Assembly: GCF_030144855.1 (NCBI RefSeq)
Contig: NC_082714.1
Coordinates: forward strand, 31,682,001-31,746,000
DNA length: 64,000 nucleotides
Direction: 5' to 3'
Origin: Hypanus sabinus
Lineage: Eukaryota
Shown piece after piece: positions 17,845 through 51,503 of the stretch (position 1 is the stretch's first letter; the number at the start of each line of letters is the position of its first letter). A model generated the notes under the pieces. That model searched no databases. It was not told the DNA's origin and was given only the letters and a program-made list of their open reading frames with translations. The position numbers and the translations under genes are program-made.

Positions 17845-19330
17845 CACTAAGGTCTTTAACCTTTCACTTCAGCAGTGTGTGGTACCCACCTGCTTCAAGC
17901 AGACTTCAGTTATACCAGTGCCCAAGAAGAGTGTGGTAACCTATCACAATGACTACCACCCAGTTGCACTTCCATCTACAGTAACAAAGTGTTTTGAGAG
18001 GTTGGTGATGAAACATGTCCACTCCTGCCTGAGAGGCGACTTAGATTCGCTCCAGGTTGCCTATCAGAGCAACAGATACACAGCAGATACCATCCCATTG
18101 GCTCTTCAATCAACCCTGGAACATCAGAACAGCAACGATGCATAAATCAGCATGCTTGTTATCAACTACAACTCAACATTCAATGCCATCATCCTCTCAA
18201 AACTAATCAATAAGCTCCAAAACTTTGTCCTCAATACCTCCTTGTACAACTAGATCCTGGATTTCCTCACTTGTAGAAACCAGTCAATTCGGATTGGCAA
18301 CAACATCTTCTCCATGATCCCCATCAGCACAGCTGTACCATAGGGCTGTGTGCTTAGCCCCTGCTCTACTCACATTACACCTAAGCCTGAGTGGCTAAGT
18401 ACAGCTCTAATACCTTACTCAAGTTTGATGATGACACCACTGTTGTGGGCTGAATCAAAGGTGGTGATCAATCAGCTTATAGGAGGGAGGTTGAAAATTT
18501 GGTTGAGTGGCGTCATAACAACAACCTCTCACTCAATGTCAACAAGACCAAGGAACTGATTATAGACTTCACGAGAGGGAGACCGGAGGTTTATGAGCCA
18601 GTCCTCTTCTGAGGATCAGAGATGGAGAGGGTTAGCAGCTTCAAATTTCTCGGTGTTACTATTTCCAAAGATCTGTATCCATCATATAAATATAATTGCA
18701 AGAAAGCACAGCAGCACTTCTACTTCCTAAGGAGTTTGTCGAGATTCGGTATGACATTTAAAACTTTGACAACCTTCTATAGATGTACATATAGTGTAGA
18801 GTATATTGACTGGTTGCATCATGACCTGGTATGGGAACACCAATGCATTTGAATGGAAAATCCTACTAAAGGTAGGATTCAGCCCAGTACATCACGGTAA
18901 ATCTCCCAACCATTGAGTACATCTACATGAAATGCTGTCGAAGGAAAATAGCATCCATCAGCGAAGATTCCCACCACCCGGGTCATGCTCTCTTCTCACT
19001 GCTTCCATCAGATAGAAGGTACAAAAAGTTTAGGACTTGCACCACCAGGTTCAAGAACAGTTACTACCCCTCAACCATTGGGCTCTTGAATAAAGGGGAT
19101 ACCTATAATCACTTGCCCCATCACAGAAATGTTCCCACAACCAATGATCTCACTTTAAGGACTCTTCATCTCATGTTCCCGTTATTTATTTTTGCATTTG
19201 CACAGTTTGTTGTTTTCTGCACTCTATTGATCCTGTTAACATATTCTGCAAATTTGCTGAGTATGCCCACAAGAAAATGAGTATCAAGACTGCATATGGT
19301 GACATATATGTACTTTGATAATAAAATTTA
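17845..19330 (+). mobile_element. Rex1/Babar LINE, RT and 3' UTR
   Basis: VPTCFKQTSVIPVPKK, ERVSSFKFLGV, LLPSDRRY...TTRFKNSYYP; 3' AATAAA and tail near 19320. Confidence 0.88.
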
Positions 19331-21114
19331 CATTGATCTTTGTAAGGAAAATTCTTCTATATCTGTAATTTCATAAAACCACACTTTTGGACAAGTTTTA
19401 ACTTCTTCCAAACTTTACACAATTGATGAAGTTAAATGTAATAAATTCATCAACATTGAACACAGAATTTACTTGGATGACTTAAGATGTACATATGCAT
19501 TTAAGTTGCTGTCCATGCCAATATTATTTCAATAATTTCTTCATTATTCCTGTTCAAACTTTTGAAGTTAATGTCTGTAGAATATTTGACAATGGTACCA
19601 TCACAGGAAAACAAAATGGCAAGCAGAAAATGCTGAAACTACTCTGCAGATGAATACTATTTGTGGAGGGAAAGAAAATAATCAGTGACGTTTCATTAGA
19701 ACCCAAGCATTCAGTTTAACCATGCCACAAACTTTTCAAAGGTAACATCTGTGCTGTGGATGAATTAGAAAGACAAATTATTAATATGTAATTTATTTTT
19801 AATCACTTGTTTGTTTCAGTAGAAATGCAAATTAATAAAATCTGCTTCGTATATAATAACATGGAAATTGTATAAGTGCTGAAGTTTTAAATATATTATG
19901 CTGAAGCTTGTGTTTACTTAGACTGCAAACTCCAACAAATGTGAATAATCCACTGATGGATGACCATCTACTCACATACTCATATCAAATATTGTAAATC
20001 CAATTTGTAAAGGTGCACATTCCTATCCCATAATATAATCATTAATTTTTATAAACAAGGAAAAAATTCTTACATTCTGTAAGATTTAGTGATAATCACA
20101 TTACACTCCATTATCTTAAAATTCCTTCAAGCCTTACTGAACACAATGATTTGACTTAAAATCCCACTCAGCTTCACTCCACTGCTTACTCCCAAGCCCC
20201 ATGATCTCCAGATGTCAAGATCCCTGTCATTTTCCATAAACCCCTTGACTGTATTTCTAGTGCTCCTTAATCCCAGAACTACCCAAATGTTCCAGGCTTC
20301 AAAATCGCTAATTTACACGATATCTCTCTGGTTGATTTTAGTATCGTGAGCTCCACTCCAGCGTGCTTGGAATTCATTCTTCTAGTTTACTCTCAGAGAT
20401 CACTAGATCCCGAATCTCATAATTTGGCCCCAAATTGGGTTCTCTTCCCAGTGCTCCTACGTGGCAGAGTCATCCCTGCACCTACTTCTAATACAGACTA
20501 ATGCCATTGAATCTCATTCAGAATCCCTTACAAAAATGTAAACTTGATTATGTATTAAAGTATTATTATTCAATCAGAAAAATAAGCAGAGTTTAGTTGT
20601 GTAAAATTAACGCGGGGAGTTGAAGTCGAAATTGCTAGCAATCTTTTTTTTCCCCCAGAAAATGTATCTCATCTCATTGTTCTCAGTAAATTGGTGAGGC
20701 AAAGTATTCAATTTTTCTGCCCCTTCAGAATCATTACCTGTGGGTTTTACTTGTGCAACCTTTAGTGGACCTATACCCATACATTTTTTTGTTTTCATAA
20801 CAATAATTCACTCCTCTTCTCTCTAAATTGCCACTCCTCTTTTACGAACCGTTTACTCAAACTGTATTTCATAGTTTGCTGATTTGTCATAGAAAGTAAC
20901 AGTGGTGTTTTCAATCATACAAATCAAATGATCAGCGGCATATGTTAAAAATCCGTGTGATGCTATGTGCATACTTGAAACTGGACGGGAGCAATCAGCG
21001 AATGTATGATAGTTTCGGAGATAAAGCTCAGAGTGTGATTTTCGAAAAGACTTCCTCACCATCTGCAGGATCATCGTGGAGTTGCAGGCTGGGCAACACA
21101 AGCTGCAGTTTCAT

Positions 21115-42075: not shown

Positions 42076-42326
42076 ATAACTGTGTTCTTAAACAAGGTGG
42101 CAAAAACTCTCTGAATATCTAATTGTATTTTTCTGTATTTGACCATTCCATTCTGTAATTTCATCAATGAAAATTTGCATCTTTTCCAAAATGAAAGACA
42201 AATGGAAATTTGTGTCTAGACCCTTTACGTTTTAAAATGTGAAAGTGCCTAATTCTGCTGCTAACAGTCTCCTGATCGTGCAGTTTACTCAAGAAGCTTG
42301 TTGAATGCCTGAGTAGCCTAATAGTA

Positions 42327-42332
42327 ATTAAA
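42327..42332 (+). terminator. Candidate ECI1 polyadenylation signal (ATTAAA variant)
   Basis: About 250 nt after the stop and followed by GT/T-rich sequence; the next AATAAA noted is at ~42775 inside a LINE. Confidence 0.4.
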
Positions 42333-42849
42333 ACAATATCTTTCAGTGTAATGTTTACTTATTTGGTTGAATCTTTACAAAACAAGTCCGGGAGTTTTGG
42401 GAATTCAGAATTTAATTTTTGTAGGAACGCTGAACTATTTTTTATTTTCAGAAGAGATTTTTTAAAAGATGCCAATTTCAAGTGAAAAAGTAATTTGTAG
42501 GAAATTGGCAAAGATGTGGAATCAAGTTTACAAAATAACTTGCAGTTGGGGATAGAATTAATCTTTATACAAACTGGTTTTCTCGGTGATCTTAACACAG
42601 TTTTAGTTAAGTGAAAGATAGCCAGTAAACCGATGGTTAAAATCAACTTCTCATTGTGAGGCATCTGGTCTTCCAGACTCAGAATTAGGTTTATTATCAT
42701 TGCTTATATGATGTGAATTGGTTGTTTTGTGGCAGCAATACAGTGTAAAGGCATAAAACTCCTATGAACTAAAAAATAAATAGTGCAAAAAAAGGAATAA
42801 TGAGGTAATGCTTTCATACGCTGTTCAGAAAACTAATGGCAGATGAGAA

Positions 42850-43084
42850 TTTAAAGAGCAAGAACGAGGAAATCTGCAGATGCTGGAAATTCAAACAACA
42901 CACACAAAATGCTGGTGGAACACAGCAGGCCAGGCAGCATCTAGAAGGTAGAAGCACTGTCGACGTTTCGGGCTGAGACCCTTTGACAAGTCCTGACGAA
43001 GGGTCTCGGCCCGAAATGTAGACAGTGATTCTACCTTGTAGATGCTGCCTGGCCTGCTGTGTTCCACCAGCATTTTGTGTGTGT
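42850..43084. mobile_element. Head-to-head Penelope-derived element with hammerhead motifs
   Basis: Arms ~42896-42984 and 42999-43086 are inverted copies; 13-bp TSD TGGCAGATGAGAA at 42837-42849 and 43085-43097. Confidence 0.85.
42990..43023 (+). ncRNA. Minimal type I hammerhead ribozyme motif
   Basis: gtc CTGACGA A GGG TCTCGG CCC GAAA TG TA gac: catalytic core, 3-bp stem II, stem III reduced to AUGU, UA cleavage triplet end, short stem I; activity untested. Confidence 0.7.
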
Positions 43085-43689
43085 TGGCAGATGAGAAGCT
43101 GTTCCTGAATCATTGAGTGTAGATCTTCCAGCTCCTCTATAATGGTAGTAATGAAAAGAGGACATACCCCAGATAGTAAGAATCCTCAAAGATAGATTCC
43201 ACTTTCTTCAGGCACTACCTGCTGTAGATGTCCTCAACGGTAGGAAGGGTTGTGCCCTCGATGGAGCTGGCTGAGTCTATGCAGCTTGTTGGAACCCTAT
43301 ACGTTGGAGGCTCCATATAAGGTGGTGATGCAACCGGTCAGAATGCTCACCATTGTCCTGCGGGGGTCCAGGCTGTGTTGGAGGCTGGACCGTCCTGTCA
43401 GTGGTTCCCTCTAGTGTTCACTTGGAGCAGGACAAGCTGGATTCCTTTTCTCAGTTGCTGCACTGGTGTGTGAATGTGGCTCCAGGACCAACATCCCGTG
43501 CCATCATACAGGCCACGACACTCAGGAACTTGGGCTATATTATTATTTTTTGTGACTGTATGTTTTTCTGCTGCCATAATTATATTGCTGTGTATGACTG
43601 TTGGTATTGTGCTTTGCATCTTGGCCCTGGAGGAACGCTGTTTCGTTTGGCTGTATTCACGTGTATAGTTGAATGACATTGCTATTCTA

Positions 43690-43918
43690 GCACAGGGTAT
43701 CGGAGTTCAGAGTTCAATCACGGCGTCCTCCATACGTCCTCCCATGGAATGCGTGGGTTTCCTCTGCGGGTTTCAGTATCCTCATACTGGGTAGTAGGTT
43801 TAATTGGTCAGTGTAAATTGTCCCATGATTAAGACAGGGTTAAATCTGGGAGTTGCTGGCAGTGCAGCTCAAAGAGCCAGAAGGGCTTATTCTGCACTAT
43901 ATCTCTAAATAAATAAAA
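43690..43918 (+). mobile_element. HE1-like V-SINE (mirror copy 50244-50472)
   Basis: B-box-like GAGTTCAATC, GCGTGGGTTTCCTC core, GGTTTAATTGGTCA.TGTAAATTGTCC, (TAAA)n tail. Confidence 0.75.
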
Positions 43919-44221
43919 ACAGTAAAATAAATAAATTCCATTATAGGTAATCAAGCCAAAAGGTTTAGGATTGGTAATCTTAATTATAGAAGTTCAATGG
44001 TATTTAGCATCATGAATCAGAATATATAATGAAATCTACATCAAAATATTCGTAGTCTGAAACTCACGTTAATGTTAGAAAAAGTAGCTTTTAGACCTTT
44101 GTAGTCTTCAATGGATTTAATGTTGGAAACAGATTTGGATTGAGCAGACTGTTAGCATGTGAGATGGAATTAATAAAGTTCAAAGTTTTAAGTAAATTTG
44201 TTATCAAAGTGTGTACCATGC

Positions 44222-44415
44222 AGGGGAGAACCGTAACCGCATGGGTTTCCTCCGTGTACTCCTGTTTCCTCCCACAGTCCAAAGATACATGGGTTGGTAG
44301 GTTAATTGGTCATTGTAAATTGTCCCGTGATTAGGCTCAGATTAAATTGGGGGATTGTTGGGCGCCACGATTCAAAGAGCCAGACGCTCTTATTCGGTAC
44401 TCTATCTCAGTAAGT
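44222..44415 (+). mobile_element. HE1-like V-SINE (mirror copy 49747-49940)
   Basis: GGGTTTCCTCCG.GTACTCC.GTTTCCTCCCACAGTCCAAAGA core. Confidence 0.75.
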
Positions 44416-44419
44416 AAAC

Positions 44420-45860
44420 TGAACTGAAATGACTTTATTTCTTACATCCTTCACATACGTGAGGAGTGGAAATCTTTACATTGCATCTCCGTCTGAATAT
44501 GAAATGTACAAATTATAGTAGTTTGTAATAAATAGTATATACAGTAAAATATACAACAGAACAGTCGATATAGCATAGAAATACAATTACATCAGCATGA
44601 ATTAATCAATCTGATGGCCTGGTGGAAGAAGCTGTCCTGGAGGCTGTTGGTCTTGGCTTTAATGCTGCGGTACAGTTTCCCGGATGGTAGCAGCTGGAAC
44701 AGTTTGTGGTTTGGGTGACTTGGGTCCCCAAAGATCCTTCAGGCCTTTTTTACACACCTGTCTTTGTAAATATCCTGAATAGTGGGAAGTTCACATCCAC
44801 AGCTGTGCTGGGCTGTCCGCATCACTCTCTGCAGAGTCCTGTGATTGAGGGAAGTACAGTTCCCATACCAGGCAGTGATGCAGCCAGTCAGGATGCTCTC
44901 AAGCGAGCCCCTGTCAAAAGTCCATAGGATTTGGAGACTCATGTTGAACTTCTTCAACTGCCTGAGGTGAAATAGGAGCTGTTGTGCTTTTTTCACCACG
45001 CAGCCAGTACTTATAGACCAAGTGAGATCCTCGGTGATGTGTATCACCCTCTCAACCCCAGATCCATTGATGTCAATAGGGTGAGCCTGTCTCCGTTCCT
45101 CCTATAGTCTACAACCAGCTCCTTTGTTTTTGTAACATTGAGGAAGAGGTTGTTTTCTGGTCACTACTGTGTCAGGGTGATGTCTTCTTCTCTGTCGGCT
45201 ACCTCGTTATTACTTGAGATAGGGCCAGTCAATGTGGTAGCATCTGCAAATTTAATTAGCAGATTGGAGCTGTGGGTGGTGACACAGTCATGGGTATACA
45301 GAGAGTAAAAGAGGGGGCTTAGAACACAGCACTGGGAGGCTCCTGTGTTGAGGATCAGAGGGGCAGAGGTGAGAGAGCCCACCCTTACTACCTGCTGGCG
45401 ATCAGACAGGAAGTCCAGGATCCAGCTGCACAAGTCAGGGTGAAGGCCGAGGTCTCTGAGCTTCTTGTCAAGCCTGGAGGGAATTATGGGATTGAATGCT
45501 GAACTGTAGTGCAAGAACAGCATTCTCATGTAAGCATCCCTCCTCTCCTGGTGTGTAAGGGTGGTGTATAGAGCTGTGGCTATTGCGTCATCTGTCAGTC
45601 GGTTGTGTCGGTAGGTGAATTGTAGGGGGTCCAGTGTGGGTGGAAACATGCTGCAGATGTAATCCTTGGCCAGCCCCTCAAAGCATTTACTTATATTGAG
45701 GTAAGTGCGACAGGACGCCACTTGTTCAGACATGTTACCGAGGTGCAGGTCTCTCCTCGGGGGCCCAGTGTTGTCGACATCGAACCGTGTAAGAAAAAGA
45801 TTTAGCTTATCTGGGAGAGAGGGAGCGATATTGGCAGCACTGCTGTGCTTAGCTTGATGT
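44420..45860 (-). mobile_element. Rex1/Babar LINE RT fragment (mirror copy 48302-49742)
   Basis: ORFs 45164-45733 (LDPLQF, YSSAFN, LSPLFYSLYTHDC, KFAD) and 44739-45047. Confidence 0.88.
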
Positions 45861-46963
45861 TAATTTGCTTGCAGGCACCCACAGGAAAAGAAGGCAATAG
45901 AATCTGTGAAAAGCCATACATAACAAAGACCAACAAATATCCAATATGCAAAAGAGGACAAAGCGTGCAAATAATAAAACAGGTAAACAAACCATACTGT
46001 GAACATGAGCTGCGGAGTCTCTGAAAGGGGATCCACAGGCTGTGGAATCAGCTCAGCACTGAGGCGAGTGAAGCCACCCATGCTGGTCCAGGACCTCAGT
46101 GCTTGTAGAATAACAACTGTTCCTAAACCTGGCGGCATGGGACCCAACGCTCCTGCACTTCCTGCCTGACAGTAGTAATGGGAAGACAAGGAGATGGGTC
46201 AAATGCAAGCAGACAGGACAGATTCAGGTGGGAGATCTTGGCTGGCACAGAGCAGTGGGTCAGAACACTGGTTCATTTTCCATTCTTGGGCCTCAATGCC
46301 CTCTTTTCCAGCAATGACTGACCTTTGTCAAAGTGCCACACCTGCATTCCTAAGAATCAAGTTTGCCAAATCCTTCAGGAGATCGTAAAATCACTAGATC
46401 ATTTAGACAGTTCAAAAGTACATTTCTTAAAGGAAAATTATAGGCTGCAGATTGCAGTGAATATAGTTCATATAAATATATTTCATACAATGCCATTGTC
46501 ATAGTAGATAAACCATGATTATCTCCTGCCAACTTTATTTGCTGATGACATCATTGTTTGCTGGCCGAATCAAAGGTGGTGATGAATCAGCCTTTAGGAG
46601 GATGATTGAAAATCTGGCTGAATGATGCCACAACAACAACCTCTCACTCAATGTCAGCAAAACCAAAGAGCTGATTATCGATTACAGGAGGAGGAAGCTG
46701 AAGGTTCATGAGCCAGTCCTCCTCCAGGAATCAGAGGTGGAGAAGGTTAATAATTTTAAATTCCTCAACATTATCATTTCAGAGGATCTGAACTGGGTCC
46801 AGGACATCATTCTGCCATTACAAAGAAGCAGCTCCACTTTCTTAGAAGTTTGAAAAGATTTTGGCATGTCATCTAAAACTTTGACAAACTTCTTTCGATG
46901 TGTGGTGGAGAGTATATTGACTGGTTGCATCATGGCCTGGTTTGGAAACACCAATGCCCTTCA

Positions 46964-47198
46964 GCCTGATGACTGAAGGGAAATAACTGTTCCTGAACCT
47001 GGTGGTGTGGGGTCTGAGGCTCGTGTACCTCCTTCCTGACGGCAGCAGTGAGAAGAGAGTATGGCCTGAATGGTGGGGGTCCTCGATGATGGATGCTGCT
47101 TTCCTAAGATGCCACTCCTCGTAGGTGTGCTCAGTGGTGGGATGGCTTTACCTATGATGGACTGGGCTGTATCTACTACTTTTTGTGGGCTTTTCCAT
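46964..47198 (-). other. Single-copy palindrome spacer (235 bp), part of a Rex1 LINE continuous with the right arm
   Basis: ORF 46961-47296 runs from the right arm through the spacer; colinear with Rex1 copy 18830-19090. Confidence 0.9.
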
Positions 47199-50100
47199 TG
47201 AAGGGCATTGGTGTTTCCAAACCAGGCCATGATGCAACCAGTCAATATACTCTCCACCACACATCGAAAGAAGTTTGTCAAAGTTTTAGATGACATGCCA
47301 AAATCTTTTCAAACTTCTAAGAAAGTGGAGCTGCTTCTTTGTAATGGCAGAATGATGTCCTGGACCCAGTTCAGATCCTCTGAAATGATAATGTTGAGGA
47401 ATTTAAAATTATTAACCTTCTCCACCTCTGATTCCTGGAGGAGGACTGGCTCATGAACCTTCAGCTTCCTCCTCCTGTAATCGATAATCAGCTCTTTGGT
47501 TTTGCTGACATTGAGTGAGAGGTTGTTGTTGTGGCATCATTCAGCCAGATTTTCAATCATCCTCCTAAAGGCTGATTCATCACCACCTTTGATTCGGCCA
47601 GCAAACAATGATGTCATCAGCAAATAAAGTTGGCAGGAGATAATCATGGTTTATCTACTATGACAATGGCATTGTATGAAATATATTTATATGAACTATA
47701 TTCACTGCAATCTGCAGCCTATAATTTTCCTTTAAGAAATGTACTTTTGAACTGTCTAAATGATCTAGTGATTTTACGATCTCCTGAAGGATTTGGCAAA
47801 CTTGATTCTTAGGAATGCAGGTGTGGCACTTTGACAAAGGTCAGTCATTGCTGGAAAAGAGGGCATTGAGGCCCAAGAATGGAAAATGAACCAGTGTTCT
47901 GACCCACTGCTCTGTGCCAGCCAAGATCTCCCACCTGAATCTGTCCTGTCTGCTTGCATTTGACCCATCTCCTTGTCTTCCCATTACTACTGTCAGGCAG
48001 GAAGTGCAGGAGCGTTGGGTCCCATGCCGCCAGGTTTAGGAACAGTTGTTATTCTACAAGCACTGAGGTCCTGGACCAGCATGGGTGGCTTCACTCGCCT
48101 CAGTGCTGAGCTGATTCCACAGCCTGTGGATCCCCTTTCAGAGACTCCGCAGCTCATGTTCACAGTATGGTTTGTTTACCTGTTTTATTATTTGCACGCT
48201 TTGTCCTCTTTTGCATATTGGATATTTGTTGGTCTTTGTTATGTATGGCTTTTCACAGATTCTATTGCCTTCTTTTCCTGTGGGTGCCTGCAAGCAAATT
48301 AACATCAAGCTAAGCACAGCAGTGCTGCCAATATCGCTCCCTCTCTCCCAGATAAGCTAAATCTTTTTCTTACACGGTTCGATGTCGACAACACTGGGCC
48401 CCCGAGGAGAGACCTGCACCTCGGTAACATGTCTGAACAAGTGGCGTCCTGTCGCACTTACCTCAATATAAGTAAATGCTTTGAGGGGCTGGCCAAGGAT
48501 TACATCTGCAGCATGTTTCCACCCACACTGGACCCCCTACAATTCACCTACCGACACAACCGACTGACAGATGACGCAATAGCCACAGCTCTATACACCA
48601 CCCTTACACACCAGGAGAGGAGGGATGCTTACATGAGAATGCTGTTCTTGCACTACAGTTCAGCATTCAATCCCATAATTCCCTCCAGGCTTGACAAGAA
48701 GCTCAGAGACCTCGGCCTTCACCCTGACTTGTGCAGCTGGATCCTGGACTTCCTGTCTGATCGCCAGCAGGTAGTAAGGGTGGGCTCTCCCACCTCTGCC
48801 CCTCTGATCCTCAACACAGGAGCCTCCCAGTGCTGTGTTCTAAGCCCCCTCTTTTACTCTCTGTATACCCATGACTGTGTCACCACCCACAGCTCCAATC
48901 TGCTAATTAAATTTGCAGATGGTACCACATTGACTGGCCCTATCTCAAGTAATAACGAGGTAGCCGACAGAGAAGAAGACATCACCCTGACACAGTAGTG
49001 ACCAGAAAACAACCTCTTCCTCAATGTTACAAAAACAAAGGAGCTGGTTGTAGACTATAGGAGGAACGGAGACAGGCTCACCCTATTGACATCAATGGAT
49101 CTGGGGTTGAGAGGGTGATACACATCACCGAGGATCTCACTTGGTCTATAAGTACTGGCTGCGTGGTGAAAAAAGCACAACAGCTCCTATTTCACCTCAG
49201 GCAGTTGAAGAAGTTCAACATGAGTCTCCAAATCCTATGGACTTTCGACAGGGGCTCGCTTGAGAGCATCCTGACTGGCTGCATCACTGCCTGGTATGGG
49301 AACTGTACTTCCCTCAATCACAGAACTCTGCAGAGAGTGATGCGGACAGCCCAGCACAGCTGTGGATGTGAACTTCCCACTATTCAGGATATTTACAAAG
49401 ACAGGTGTGTAAAAAAGGCCTGAAGGATCTTTGGGGACCCAAGTCACCCAAACCACAAACTGTTCCAGCTGCTACCATCCGGGAAACAGTACCGCAGCAT
49501 TAAAGCCAAGACCAACAGCCTCCAGGACAGCTTCTTTCACCAGGCCATCAGACTGATTAATTCATGCTGATGTAATTGTATTTCTATGCTATATCGACTG
49601 TTCTGTTGTATATTTTATTGTATATACTATTTATTACAAACTACTATAATTTGTACATTTCATATTCAGACGGAGATGCAATGTAAAGATTTCCACTCCT
49701 CACGTATGTGAAGGATGTAAGAAATAAAGTCATTTCAGTTCAGTTTACTTACTGAGATAGAGTACCGAATAAGAGCGTCTGGCTCTTTGAATCGTGGCGC
49801 CCAACAATCCCCCAATTTAATCTGAGCCTAATCACGGGACAATTTACAATGACCAATTAACCTACCAACCCATGTATCTTTGGACTGTGGGAGGAAACAG
49901 GAGTACACGGAGGAAACCCATGCGGTTACGGTTCTCCCCTGCATGGTACACACTTTGATAACAAATTTACTTAAAACTTTGAACTTTATTAATTCCATCT
50001 CACATGCTAACAGTCTGCTCAATCCAAATCTGTTTCCAACATTAAATCTGTTGAAGGCTACAAAGGTCTAAAAGCTACTTTTTCTAACATTGACGTGAGT

Positions 50101-51164
50101 TTCAGACTACGAACATTTTGATGTAGATTTCATTATATATTCTGATTCATGATGCTAAATACCATTGAACTTCTATAATTAAGATTACCAATCCTAAACC
50201 TTTTGGCTTGATTACCTATAATGGAATTTATTTATTTTACTGTTTTTATTTATTTAGAGATACAGTGCAGAATAAGCCCTTCTGGCTCTTTGAGCTGCAC
50301 TGCCAGCAACTCCCAGATTTAACCCTGTCTTAATCATGGGACAATTTACACTGACCAATTAAACCTACTACCCAGTATGAGGATACTGAAACCCCCAGAG
50401 GAAACCCACGCATTCCACGGGAGGACGTACGGAAGACGCCGTGATTGAACTCTGAACTCCGATACCCTGTGCTAGAATAGCAATGTCATTCAACTATACA
50501 CGTGAATACAGCCAAATGAAAAAGCGTTCCTCCAGTGCCAAGATGCAAAGCACAATACCAACAGTCATACACAGCAATATAATTATGGCAGCAGAAAAAC
50601 ATACAGTCACAAAAAATAATAATATAGCCCAAGTTCCTGAGTGTCGCGCCTGTATGATGGCACGGGATGTTGGTCCTGGAGCCACATTCACACACCAGTG
50701 CAGCCACTGAGAAAAGGAATCCAGCTTGTCCTGCTCCAAGTGAACACTAGAGGGAACCACTGACAGGACGGTCCAGCCTCCAACACAGCCTGGACCCCCG
50801 CAGGACAATGGGGAGCATTCTGACCGGTTGCATCACCACCTTATATGGAGCCTCCAACGTATAGGGTTCCAACAAGCTGCATAGACTCAGCCAGCTCCAT
50901 TGAGGGCACAACCCTTCCTACCGTTGAGGACATCTACAGCAGGTAGTGCCTGAAGAAAGTGGAATCTATCTTTGAGGATTCTTACTATCTGGGGTATGTC
51001 CTCTTTTCATTACTACCATTATAGAGTAGCTGGAAGATCTACACTCAATGATTCAGGAACAGCTTCTCATCTGCCAACACACACAAAATGCTGGTGGAAC
51101 ACAGCAGGCCAGGCAGCATCTACAAGGTAGAATCACTGTCTACGTTTCGGGCCGAGACCCTTCG
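47199..51164 (-). repeat. Right arm of 8.2-kb palindrome (3966 bp)
   Basis: Reverse complement of 42997-46963 with about 27 substitutions and one 1-bp indel by manual count. Confidence 0.98.
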
Positions 51165-51192
51165 GGCTGGACTCATCAGTTAACTACTCATC

Positions 51193-51503
51193 AGGGGTGA
51201 TTAATAAGTTCATGGCCTAAAGTAGAAGATGAGTTATTAACTTCAAACTTTCTGCGTAATCACTCAGAGTTGAACTGCATGTGCACGTAGAGAGCTCGAT
51301 AACTCATCACCGTCTACCTTAGGCCACGAACTTATCAATCACCCATCTGTGGACATTCTCTGGAGGTCCAAGATCCGTATGCTCCATGACCGCTGGACTA
51401 AGTGTGTAAATGTAGAAGGGGACTATGTTGAAAAATAAATGTGCTAGGTTTTCTAAAATAGACGCCTTCCTCCTTAGGCCACGAACTTATCAATCACCCC
51501 TAG
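51193..51503. mobile_element. Non-autonomous mariner derivative with three TIR copies
   Basis: TIR AGGGGTGATT[A/G]ATAAGTTC[A/G]TGGCCTAA at 51193-51220, inverted copies ending at 51344 and 51503 (the latter followed by TA); IRMLHDRWTKCVNVEGDYVEK* (51373-51438) is a mariner transposase C-terminus. Confidence 0.88.

What the first reader, a model, noticed from the sequence alone, without database searches (positions are those of the whole stretch)
42997..46963. Arm divergence falls to zero toward the centre, the signature expected of arm-to-arm gene conversion
Seen (manual count): about 20 differences in 42997-44120, about 8 in 44121-45372, and none in the inner 1591 bp (45373-46963). Many differences are transitions. 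At 44112-44113 one arm has TG and the other CA, the two alternative decay products of one CpG, which looks like real mutation rather than read error. A single duplication event should give uniform divergence. Inference: ongoing homogenisation starting near the spacer, as known for primate Y-chromosome palindromes but at kb scale.
Basis: partly seen in the sequence, partly recalled or inferred. Interest (0 to 1): 0.8.

Follow-up and report, generated by a model that had tools for sequence, protein, structure and literature searches.

The report
Kilobase palindrome with mismatch-free centre
An 8.2-kb inverted repeat of transposon debris between the ECI1 and INTS15 genes has arms that differ only in their outer 60% and are identical near the centre, which fits copy-correction between the arms starting at the centre, a known process, but no independent DNA reads could confirm it.

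Summary
The arms are 42997-46963 and 47199-51164, with a 235-bp spacer. Uniform scatter is rejected (P about 6e-7; still 1e-4 to 3e-4 after merging clustered sites).

The empty inner 1,591 bp is not a cold spot. It has as many CpGs as the outer zone. Contigs of three related species differ from it by about 1.7-2.2%, close to the 2.1-2.7% of the outer zone, so about 22 arm differences were expected.

Those species carry CG at 44112-13, which confirms the TG/CA CpG-decay reading. Both arms carry derived alleles (3 left, 5 right).

The firm feature is a step: an identical 3.4-kb core. The outer-versus-middle gradient is weaker (p=0.013, lost when clusters are merged).

My best reading (about 0.5) is one or a few centre-anchored copying events between the arms, by conversion or template switching. 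"Ongoing" conversion is not shown.

Rivals are late re-copying or inward growth of the repeat (about 0.2) and an assembly artefact (about 0.17). No indexed run holds right-arm-specific words; the same-species runs look RNA-like and carry only the left arm.

This is a new member of a known kind, of modest interest.

The parts
42997..46963 (.). Left arm of the palindrome (3,967 bp)
   Evidence: 99.3% complementary to 47199-51164
46964..47198 (-). Spacer (235 bp). It is the 3' end of a LINE-like fragment, read on the minus strand, and is contiguous with the inner end of the right arm.
   Evidence: window 18424-19084 aligns without a break to the minus strand of 47624-46963. ORF 46961-47296(-) runs from the right arm through the whole spacer.
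47199..51164 (.). Right arm of the palindrome (3,966 bp)
45373..48789 (.). Mismatch-free core: inner 1,591 bp of each arm plus the spacer (3,417 bp)
   Evidence: no difference inside 45373-46963 / 47199-48789. P = 5.8e-7 under uniform scatter.
44121..45372 (.). Middle zone with 8 differences (0.64%). It is mostly a high-copy LINE reverse-transcriptase fragment (ORFs 44739-45047 and 45164-45733 on the minus strand).
   Evidence: (RVT_1 E=1.6e-8; PF09004 E=2e-9); depth profile
42997..44120 (.). Outer zone with 20 differences (1.78%). It includes low-copy sequence at 43171-43484 and 43956-44128, where related species allow the differences to be polarised.
44112..44113 (+). CpG decayed differently in each arm: left TG, right CA (mirror positions 50049-50050). 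Three related species have CG.
   Evidence: (44112 T>C in X3, X8, X9; nothing listed at 44113)
42838..43097 (.). Small head-to-head Penelope-like terminus element (42851-43084) flanked by a 13-bp target-site duplication TGGCAGATGAGAA (42838-42850 and 43085-43097). The outer end of the big palindrome (42997) lies at its axis.
   Evidence: The right arm carries only one half plus the inner TSD copy.
51191..51350 (.). A roughly 160-nt fold-back element, 26 nt outside the outer end of the right arm
   Evidence: only hairpin-type model hits, far below gathering scores; local inverted repeats

Best explanation
This is a real intergenic palindrome built from old transposon fragments, lying downstream of ECI1 and upstream of INTS15. 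After the inverted duplication, both arms accumulated ordinary point mutations (transition-rich, with CpG decay). Later, one arm was copied onto the other from the centre outward at least once. The most recent event reached at least 1,591 bp. An older event may have reached about 2.85 kb, to near 44113-44544, which would explain why the middle zone has 0.64% differences and the outer zone 1.78%.

The inferred mechanism is one of two. In the first, a nascent strand that has replicated one arm and the 235-bp spacer snaps back and uses that arm as template for the second arm (Ripley-type template switching, as described for short inverted repeats). In the second, a break near the centre of symmetry is repaired from the other arm (intrachromatid gene conversion with a polarity gradient). 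Both give tracts anchored at the spacer and can flip the spacer.

Shown: the geometry, the counts, their non-uniformity, normal between-species divergence of the inner zone, and derived alleles on both arms. Inferred: that the copying replaced an already homologous arm, where it started, and its enzymology.
For: The counts and statistics are exact.

Mutability is similar across zones: 22/20/22 CpGs and GC of 0.438/0.443/0.455.

The inner zone differs from contigs of organisms B, C and D by about 2.2%, 1.7% and 1.8%, against 2.6%, 2.1% and 2.5% for the outer zone (table 8). About 22 arm differences were therefore expected in the inner zone, and 0 are seen.

Both arms carry derived states relative to three related species. 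Left-derived: 43456, 44048, 44112. Right-derived: 43260, 43349, 44070, 44105, 44113. The outer differences are therefore real lineage-specific mutations, with a 19:8 Ts:Tv ratio.

The outer TSD marks the left arm as original, yet the spacer is contiguous with the right arm. This is what a spacer flip by arm-to-arm exchange would leave.

In organism C the arm contigs have depth 28-39, against 16.9 for the one flank contig. This hints that the palindrome predates the species split.

Literature: template switching homogenises inverted-repeat arms and inverts spacers, and is favoured by short spacers (PMC8604942). Rearrangements in primate X palindromes concentrate at the centre of symmetry (PMC8327919). 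[quoted passage not shown] Kilobase-scale inverted repeats are kept identical in Caenorhabditis (PMC1803023).
Against: No DNA reads of the same species were available. Every organism-A run holds 0.64-0.67 of the right-arm outer words, which is exactly the 0.6655 of those words shared with the left arm. The right arm therefore has no independent support.

A step model (AIC 308.7) fits as well as a ramp (308.9), and the two-step model is only slightly better (306.0). A single event suffices, and the outer-versus-middle contrast fades when clustered sites are merged.

Whether related species have the palindrome rests on the depth of one 129-nt contig.

The flipped spacer can also arise directly from a two-switch inverted duplication, so it does not prove exchange between the arms.

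No GC bias is visible: strong/weak bases split 10 versus 14 between the arms.
Confidence: 0.5

Rival explanations
1. The inner segments are simply younger duplicates, produced by staged structure building. An older inverted repeat with a larger spacer grew inward, as plastid inverted repeats expand. Alternatively, the centre was deleted and re-synthesised by fold-back copying of one arm. In either case no mismatches ever existed to be converted.
For: The best-fitting models are steps, with breaks about 1,590 and 2,850 nt from the spacer. The left-arm/spacer junction coincides with the natural 3' end of a LINE fragment, and a 7-nt CCCTTCA/TGAAGGG inverted match sits at that junction, which looks like a structural breakpoint. 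Centres of palindromes are known hot spots of rearrangement, and their inner boundaries turn over between species (PMC8327919, PMC5054716).
Against: One LINE reverse-transcriptase fragment (44739-45733) runs unbroken across the 45372 zone border in both arms. No relic of an older spacer or junction is visible at either zone border. In organism C the inner-zone and outer-zone contigs have the same depth, about twice that of the flank, which suggests both zones were already duplicated before the split.
Confidence: 0.2
2. Assembly artefact. Either the palindrome or its identical core was produced by assembly or polishing, or the outer differences are allelic: a phase switch in the identical centre joined arms from two haplotypes.
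For: No indexed run contains any right-arm-specific 31-mer. In run X1 a 1,264-nt contig is identical to the left arm across 15 or more difference sites, and no right-arm allele is laid there. The identical centre is where a phase switch would go unnoticed.
Against: There are no N runs in the window, unique flanks lie on both sides, and the 235-bp spacer is native LINE sequence rather than an adapter. The differences are transition-rich and CpG-type with one complex indel, which is unlike read error. The organism-A runs are not uniform DNA. Their depth relative to X3 varies from 0.009 to 0.17 across repeat families, while X8/X3 stays at 1.5-2.2. Their depth also falls 48, 37, 7, 2 away from ECI1, and the two-copy inner unique zone is almost uncovered. 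They therefore look like RNA or an enriched library that samples only the left arm, downstream of ECI1. Five organism-A samples show no right-arm alleles, so those alleles are not common variants of the left arm. Neither polishing nor allelic mixing predicts a centre-anchored pattern.
Confidence: 0.17
3. Chance, a local low mutation rate, or purifying selection on the inner arms. A uniform-initiation conversion process with edge effects belongs in the same group.
For: CpG density is somewhat lower in the inner zone (1.4% against 2.0%), and divergence from related species is about 20% lower.
Against: P is at most 3e-4 under every clustering tried. The inner zone diverges from three related species at 1.7-2.2%, so about 22 differences were expected. 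It is transposon debris with no intact ORF. A symmetric edge effect predicts equal excess at both arm ends, but the counts are 0 versus 20 (p = 1.9e-6).
Confidence: 0.03

Closest known systems
Large sex-chromosome palindromes homogenised by arm-to-arm gene conversion (human/ape Y P1-P8, primate and mouse X palindromes)
   Same: Inverted arms around a unique spacer with more than 99% arm identity. [quoted passage not shown] The centre of symmetry is the dynamic part, and spacer inversions occur (PMC8327919, PMC3723533).
   Different: The arms are 4 kb rather than 10 kb to 1.5 Mb. The locus is intergenic transposon debris with no arm genes, flanked by ordinary housekeeping genes and with no sign of a sex-linked ampliconic context. 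Identity is 99.3% overall, with a perfectly identical core. No population or multi-species evidence of conversion events is available here.
Template-switch homogenisation of inverted repeats (Ripley quasi-palindrome correction; yeast survey PMC8604942)
   Same: One arm serves as template for the other. The process is favoured by a short spacer, it can invert the spacer, and tracts begin next to the spacer.
   Different: Documented cases involve arms of a few to tens of bp and spacers of a few bp. Here the copied tract would be at least 1.6 kb across a 235-bp loop.
Kilobase-scale inverted repeats maintained in Caenorhabditis (hsp-16 and F44E5.4/5 loci; PMC1803023)
   Same: Arms of 2-4 kb, spacers of 126-414 bp, near-perfect identity attributed to conversion via cruciform or heteroduplex repair.
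   Different: Those arms hold paralogous genes and are conserved across species. This one is non-coding and its age is unknown. No positional pattern of divergence was reported there.
Plastid inverted-repeat expansion and contraction
   Same: It would give younger duplicated sequence next to the single-copy region, and so a stepwise age profile.
   Different: It concerns an organellar, recombination-dependent replication context. Here it serves only as a structural analogy for the rival explanation.

Membership tests
Palindromes evolving in concert by arm-to-arm gene conversion | Two inverted, near-identical arms around a non-duplicated spacer | tested here: met
   3,967/3,966-bp arms, 99.3% identity, 235-bp spacer
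Palindromes evolving in concert by arm-to-arm gene conversion | Arms more alike within a species than orthologous arms between species, with the palindrome older than the species split | tested here: inconclusive
   The inner zone shows 0% arm-to-arm divergence against 1.7-2.2% to organisms B-D. Presence of the palindrome in those species is hinted only by the depth of arm contigs in X8 being twice that of one flank contig.
Palindromes evolving in concert by arm-to-arm gene conversion | Observed conversion events (loss or gain of arm differences on a phylogeny or pedigree) | not testable with these tools
   No same-species DNA runs hold both arms, and read laying was capped at one call.
Palindromes evolving in concert by arm-to-arm gene conversion | GC-biased fixation of converted sites | tested here: inconclusive
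   Only the remaining differences can be scored: 10 sites have the strong base on the left arm and 14 on the right. Converted sites are invisible without complete outgroup sequence.
Large ampliconic sex-chromosome palindromes | Arms of at least about 8-10 kb carrying testis-expressed gene families | tested here: not met
   The arms are 4 kb and hold only decayed LINE and Penelope-like fragments. The flanking genes are ECI1 and INTS15.
Template-switch (quasi-palindrome) homogenisation | Homogenised tract abuts a short spacer | tested here: met
   The identical block 45373-48789 is centred on the 235-bp spacer.
Template-switch (quasi-palindrome) homogenisation | Spacer inversion relative to the ancestral order | tested here: inconclusive
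   The TSD shows the outer end of the left arm is original, while the spacer is contiguous with the right arm. This is consistent with a flip, but a two-switch origin gives the same order.
Assembly artefact from palindromic (missed-adapter or chimeric) reads or haplotype duplication | Arms differ only by read-error-type changes, an adapter or no spacer at the axis, and a position at a contig end or gap | tested here: not met
   19 transitions, 8 transversions and one complex indel, with CpG decay confirmed by outgroups. The spacer is native LINE sequence. There is no N in the window and both flanks are unique.

The most novel reading that the evidence does not exclude
Short-spacer kilobase palindromes in this vertebrate genome are corrected from the centre outward by snap-back template switching or by centre-break repair. 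Time since the last correction would then rise with distance from the spacer, giving a natural polarity gradient that records the tract-length distribution. The same locus would be kept palindromic in several sister species by this process (concerted evolution of non-coding arms).
Probability: 0.3. Interest if true: 0.55.

Novelty: new member of a known kind. Interest (0 to 1): 0.35.

Why it matters
If reads and sister-species assemblies confirm it, this locus would be a compact, neutral, fully sequenceable example of where homogenisation starts in a palindrome. Conversion in megabase sex-chromosome palindromes is hard to localise. A 4-kb arm with a 235-bp spacer can be spanned by single long reads, so tract origins, tract lengths and spacer flips could be measured directly in populations. 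It would also link Ripley-type template switching at bp scale to palindrome conversion at kb-Mb scale. As it stands, it is one unreplicated locus showing a pattern that known processes predict.

Tried and rejected
Rfam at gathering scores over the whole window gave no hits. With E-value thresholds around both outer boundaries there were no hammerhead hits, only weak hairpin-type matches.

Tandem Repeats Finder found nothing in 40-54 kb.

I looked for the continuation of the LINE copy (19085-19500) in either flank of the palindrome, to find the pre-duplication neighbour of the spacer. Scores were no better than shuffled sequence.

I tried to fetch independent assemblies through exact-protein look-ups of the spacer ORF and the arm reverse-transcriptase ORF. 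Neither is on record.

Polarising the eight middle-zone differences from the majority letter of transposon copies was abandoned. The table is truncated, and in high-copy bins single-locus contigs fall below the 10% share threshold.

A microhomology explanation for the left-arm/spacer junction was explored. A 7-nt CCCTTCA/TGAAGGG match exists, but no consistent priming geometry was found, so I make no claim.

A model of uniform initiation with edge effects was rejected on symmetry grounds.
Full report
**Observation.** The repeat finder and a MAFFT alignment of one arm against the reverse complement of the other define a palindrome. The arms are 42997-46963 and 47199-51164, and the spacer is 46964-47198 (235 bp). 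The arms differ at 28 positions. There are 20 in 42997-44120 (19 substitutions plus a 1-nt indel at 43513, which together with 43515 forms one small complex change), 8 in 44121-45372, and none in 45373-46963. Nineteen substitutions are transitions and eight are transversions. Eight to ten lie at CpG sites. At 44112-13 the left arm reads TG and the right arm CA.

**Is it more than chance?** Under uniform scatter, the probability that the inner 1,591 bp is empty is 5.8e-7. The KS test gives p = 1.4e-5 and the mean-position test z = -4.5. If neighbouring differences are merged into 16-23 events, the empty core still has P = 7.6e-6 to 2.7e-4. The contrast between the outer zone (1.78%) and the middle zone (0.64%) has p = 0.013 when sites are independent, but only 0.10-0.32 after merging. 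Clustering itself is not significant. Model comparison gives AIC 335.4 for uniform, 308.7 for a single step, 308.9 for a ramp, and 306.0 for two steps with breaks about 1,590 and 2,850 nt from the spacer. The robust feature is thus a mismatch-free 3,417-bp core (45373-48789). A graded decline outside it is plausible but not established.

**What the sequence is.** The arms are a mosaic of transposon fragments.
- A LINE reverse-transcriptase fragment lies on the minus strand of the left arm (45164-45733, RVT_1 E = 1.6e-8). Its C-terminal region is at 44739-45047 (PF09004, a domain model that this LINE tail matches).
- There are short SINE-like direct repeats and some low-copy stretches.
- A second LINE-like 3' fragment occupies the inner ends of the arms.

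Pfam confirms ECH_1 (ECI1-type) exons on the + strand at 34.2 and 39.4 kb and INTS15 exons on the + strand from 59.1 kb. The palindrome is therefore intergenic.

**Boundaries.** The outer end of the left arm (42997) falls at the axis of a small head-to-head Penelope-like terminus element (42851-43084). This element is flanked by a perfect 13-bp target-site duplication, TGGCAGATGAGAA, at 42838-42850 and 43085-43097. The right arm carries only one half of that element plus the inner TSD copy, and then runs into unrelated sequence. At the outer end, therefore, the left arm is the original and the right arm the copy.

At the inner end the reverse holds. A related LINE copy at 18424-19084 aligns without interruption to the minus strand of 47624-46963, and an ORF runs from the right arm through the entire spacer. 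The spacer is thus contiguous with the right arm. The left-arm/spacer junction is the breakpoint, and it coincides with the 3' end of that element. This is what note s1-233798 called a flipped spacer. It fits a spacer inversion by exchange between the arms. A two-switch inverted duplication could also give the same order directly, so I do not count it as proof of recombination.

Rfam finds no hammerhead at E <= 1 in either boundary region. A roughly 160-nt fold-back lies 26 nt beyond the right arm.

**Evidence from public runs.** Only contigs were available, and read laying allowed one call.

Organism A is the species of the window. Run X1 has a 1,264-nt contig at 43058-44321 with no difference from the left arm. 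No right-arm allele is laid there. A word search with the outer region of the right arm gave shares of 0.64-0.67 in four organism-A samples and at most 0.55 in RNA runs. The fraction of right-arm 31-mers shared with the left arm is 0.6655. No indexed run therefore holds any right-arm-specific word.

These runs do not behave like uniform genomic DNA. Their depth relative to X3 varies from 0.009 to 0.17 among repeat families, whereas X8/X3 stays at 1.5-2.2. Their depth also falls 48, 37, 7, 2 with distance from ECI1, and the two-copy inner unique zone is nearly uncovered. I read them as RNA-like or enriched libraries that sample an ECI1-downstream transcript entering the left arm. They neither confirm nor refute the right arm. 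They do show the left-arm haplotype intact in five samples, which argues weakly against the outer differences being common alleles.

**Related species.** Organisms B, C and D (X3, X8, X9; 2.2-2.7 Gb of contigs each) hold single contigs over the low-copy parts of the arm.
- Divergence from the left arm is 2.6%, 2.1% and 2.5% in the outer zone, and 2.2%, 1.7% and 1.8% in the inner zone (table 8). The inner zone evolves at a normal rate. Scaled from the outer zone, about 22 arm differences were expected there, and none is seen.
- CpG counts are 22, 20 and 22 in the three zones, and GC is 0.438-0.455. Low mutability, constraint or chance therefore does not explain the core.
- In the unique stretches, all three species carry the right-arm allele at 43456, 44048 and 44112. 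They show no difference from the left arm at 43260, 43349, 44070, 44105 and 44113.
- In organism C the arm contigs have word depth 28-39, while the one flank contig has 16.9. This hints that the palindrome, inner and outer zones alike, exists there with collapsed arms. It rests on one 129-nt contig.

**Interpretation.** A single duplication followed by uniform divergence is rejected. So is conversion with uniform initiation and symmetric edge effects, since the counts are 0 at the inner edge and 20 at the outer edge (p = 1.9e-6). What remains is copying of one arm onto the other, anchored at the centre, at least once and possibly twice.

Two mechanisms predict spacer-anchored tracts. One is snap-back template switching during replication; it is described for short inverted repeats, where it homogenises arms, inverts spacers and prefers short spacers (PMC8604942). 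The other is repair of a break near the centre of symmetry using the other arm. The literature agrees that the centre is the active part of palindromes (PMC8327919; inner boundaries turn over between human and chimpanzee, PMC5054716). [quoted passage not shown] Kilobase-scale inverted repeats kept identical by conversion are known in Caenorhabditis (PMC1803023).

The main biological rival is that the inner segments are younger duplicates, from inward growth of the repeat or re-synthesis of a deleted centre. This differs only in whether the overwritten sequence was already homologous, and it cannot be excluded without the structure in sister species. An assembly artefact cannot be excluded either, because no same-species DNA reads were accessible. 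The native spacer, the unique flanks, the absence of gaps and the natural mutation spectrum all argue against it.

**Verdict.** The pattern is what centre-anchored homogenisation predicts, but "ongoing" conversion is not shown, the gradient may be a single step, and the structure lacks independent read support. It is a new member of a known kind (palindromes homogenised between their arms). Its interest is modest, as a small, neutral and tractable example.

Noticed in passing
window 42838-43097: Head-to-head Penelope-like terminus element (arms about 95% alike) with a perfect 13-bp TSD, TGGCAGATGAGAA. The outer breakpoint of the 8.2-kb palindrome lies at its axis, which suggests the small hairpin-prone element set the end of the duplication. 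Rfam gives no hammerhead hit at E<=1 here.
   Followed up: partly
window 51191-51350: A roughly 160-nt fold-back (MITE-like hairpin; only weak miRNA-model hits far below gathering scores), 26 nt outside the right arm. Both outer boundaries therefore adjoin small palindromic elements.
   Followed up: no
window 42220-44458: Organism-A runs (four samples of one study plus RNA runs) hold a contig identical to the outer part of the left arm and to the flank next to it. Depth falls away from ECI1 (48, 37, 7, 2), and none of the right-arm-specific words is present. This is probably an ECI1 3'UTR or read-through transcript entering the left arm. There is no sign of a transcript covering both arms, so the long-hairpin-RNA idea is unsupported for the outer region.
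   Followed up: partly
window 46957-46980 and 47199-47205: The last 7 nt of the left arm (CCCTTCA) can pair with TGAAGGG 10 nt into the spacer. The same TGAAGGG begins the right arm. This may be microhomology at the inner junction, but I found no consistent priming model.
   Followed up: partly
window 18424-19084: A 661-bp copy (about 75% identical) of the LINE-like 3' element that forms the spacer and the inner arm ends. Both copies start and stop at the same element positions, which suggests a discrete roughly 660-bp unit rather than random 5' truncation.
   Followed up: no
window 43784-43913 and 44285-44418 (mirrored at 50249-50378 and 49744-49877): Two copies, about 75% alike, of a roughly 130-bp SINE-like repeat in direct orientation within each arm. 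Many contigs of the related species join sequences around them (joints 43718 to 44264/44297), which reflects the repeat family rather than this locus.
   Followed up: no
window 42700-42801 versus the arms, run X8 (organism C): The flank contig has depth 16.9 and seven arm contigs have 28-39. This hints that the palindrome is present, with collapsed arms, in a species about 2% diverged.
   Followed up: no
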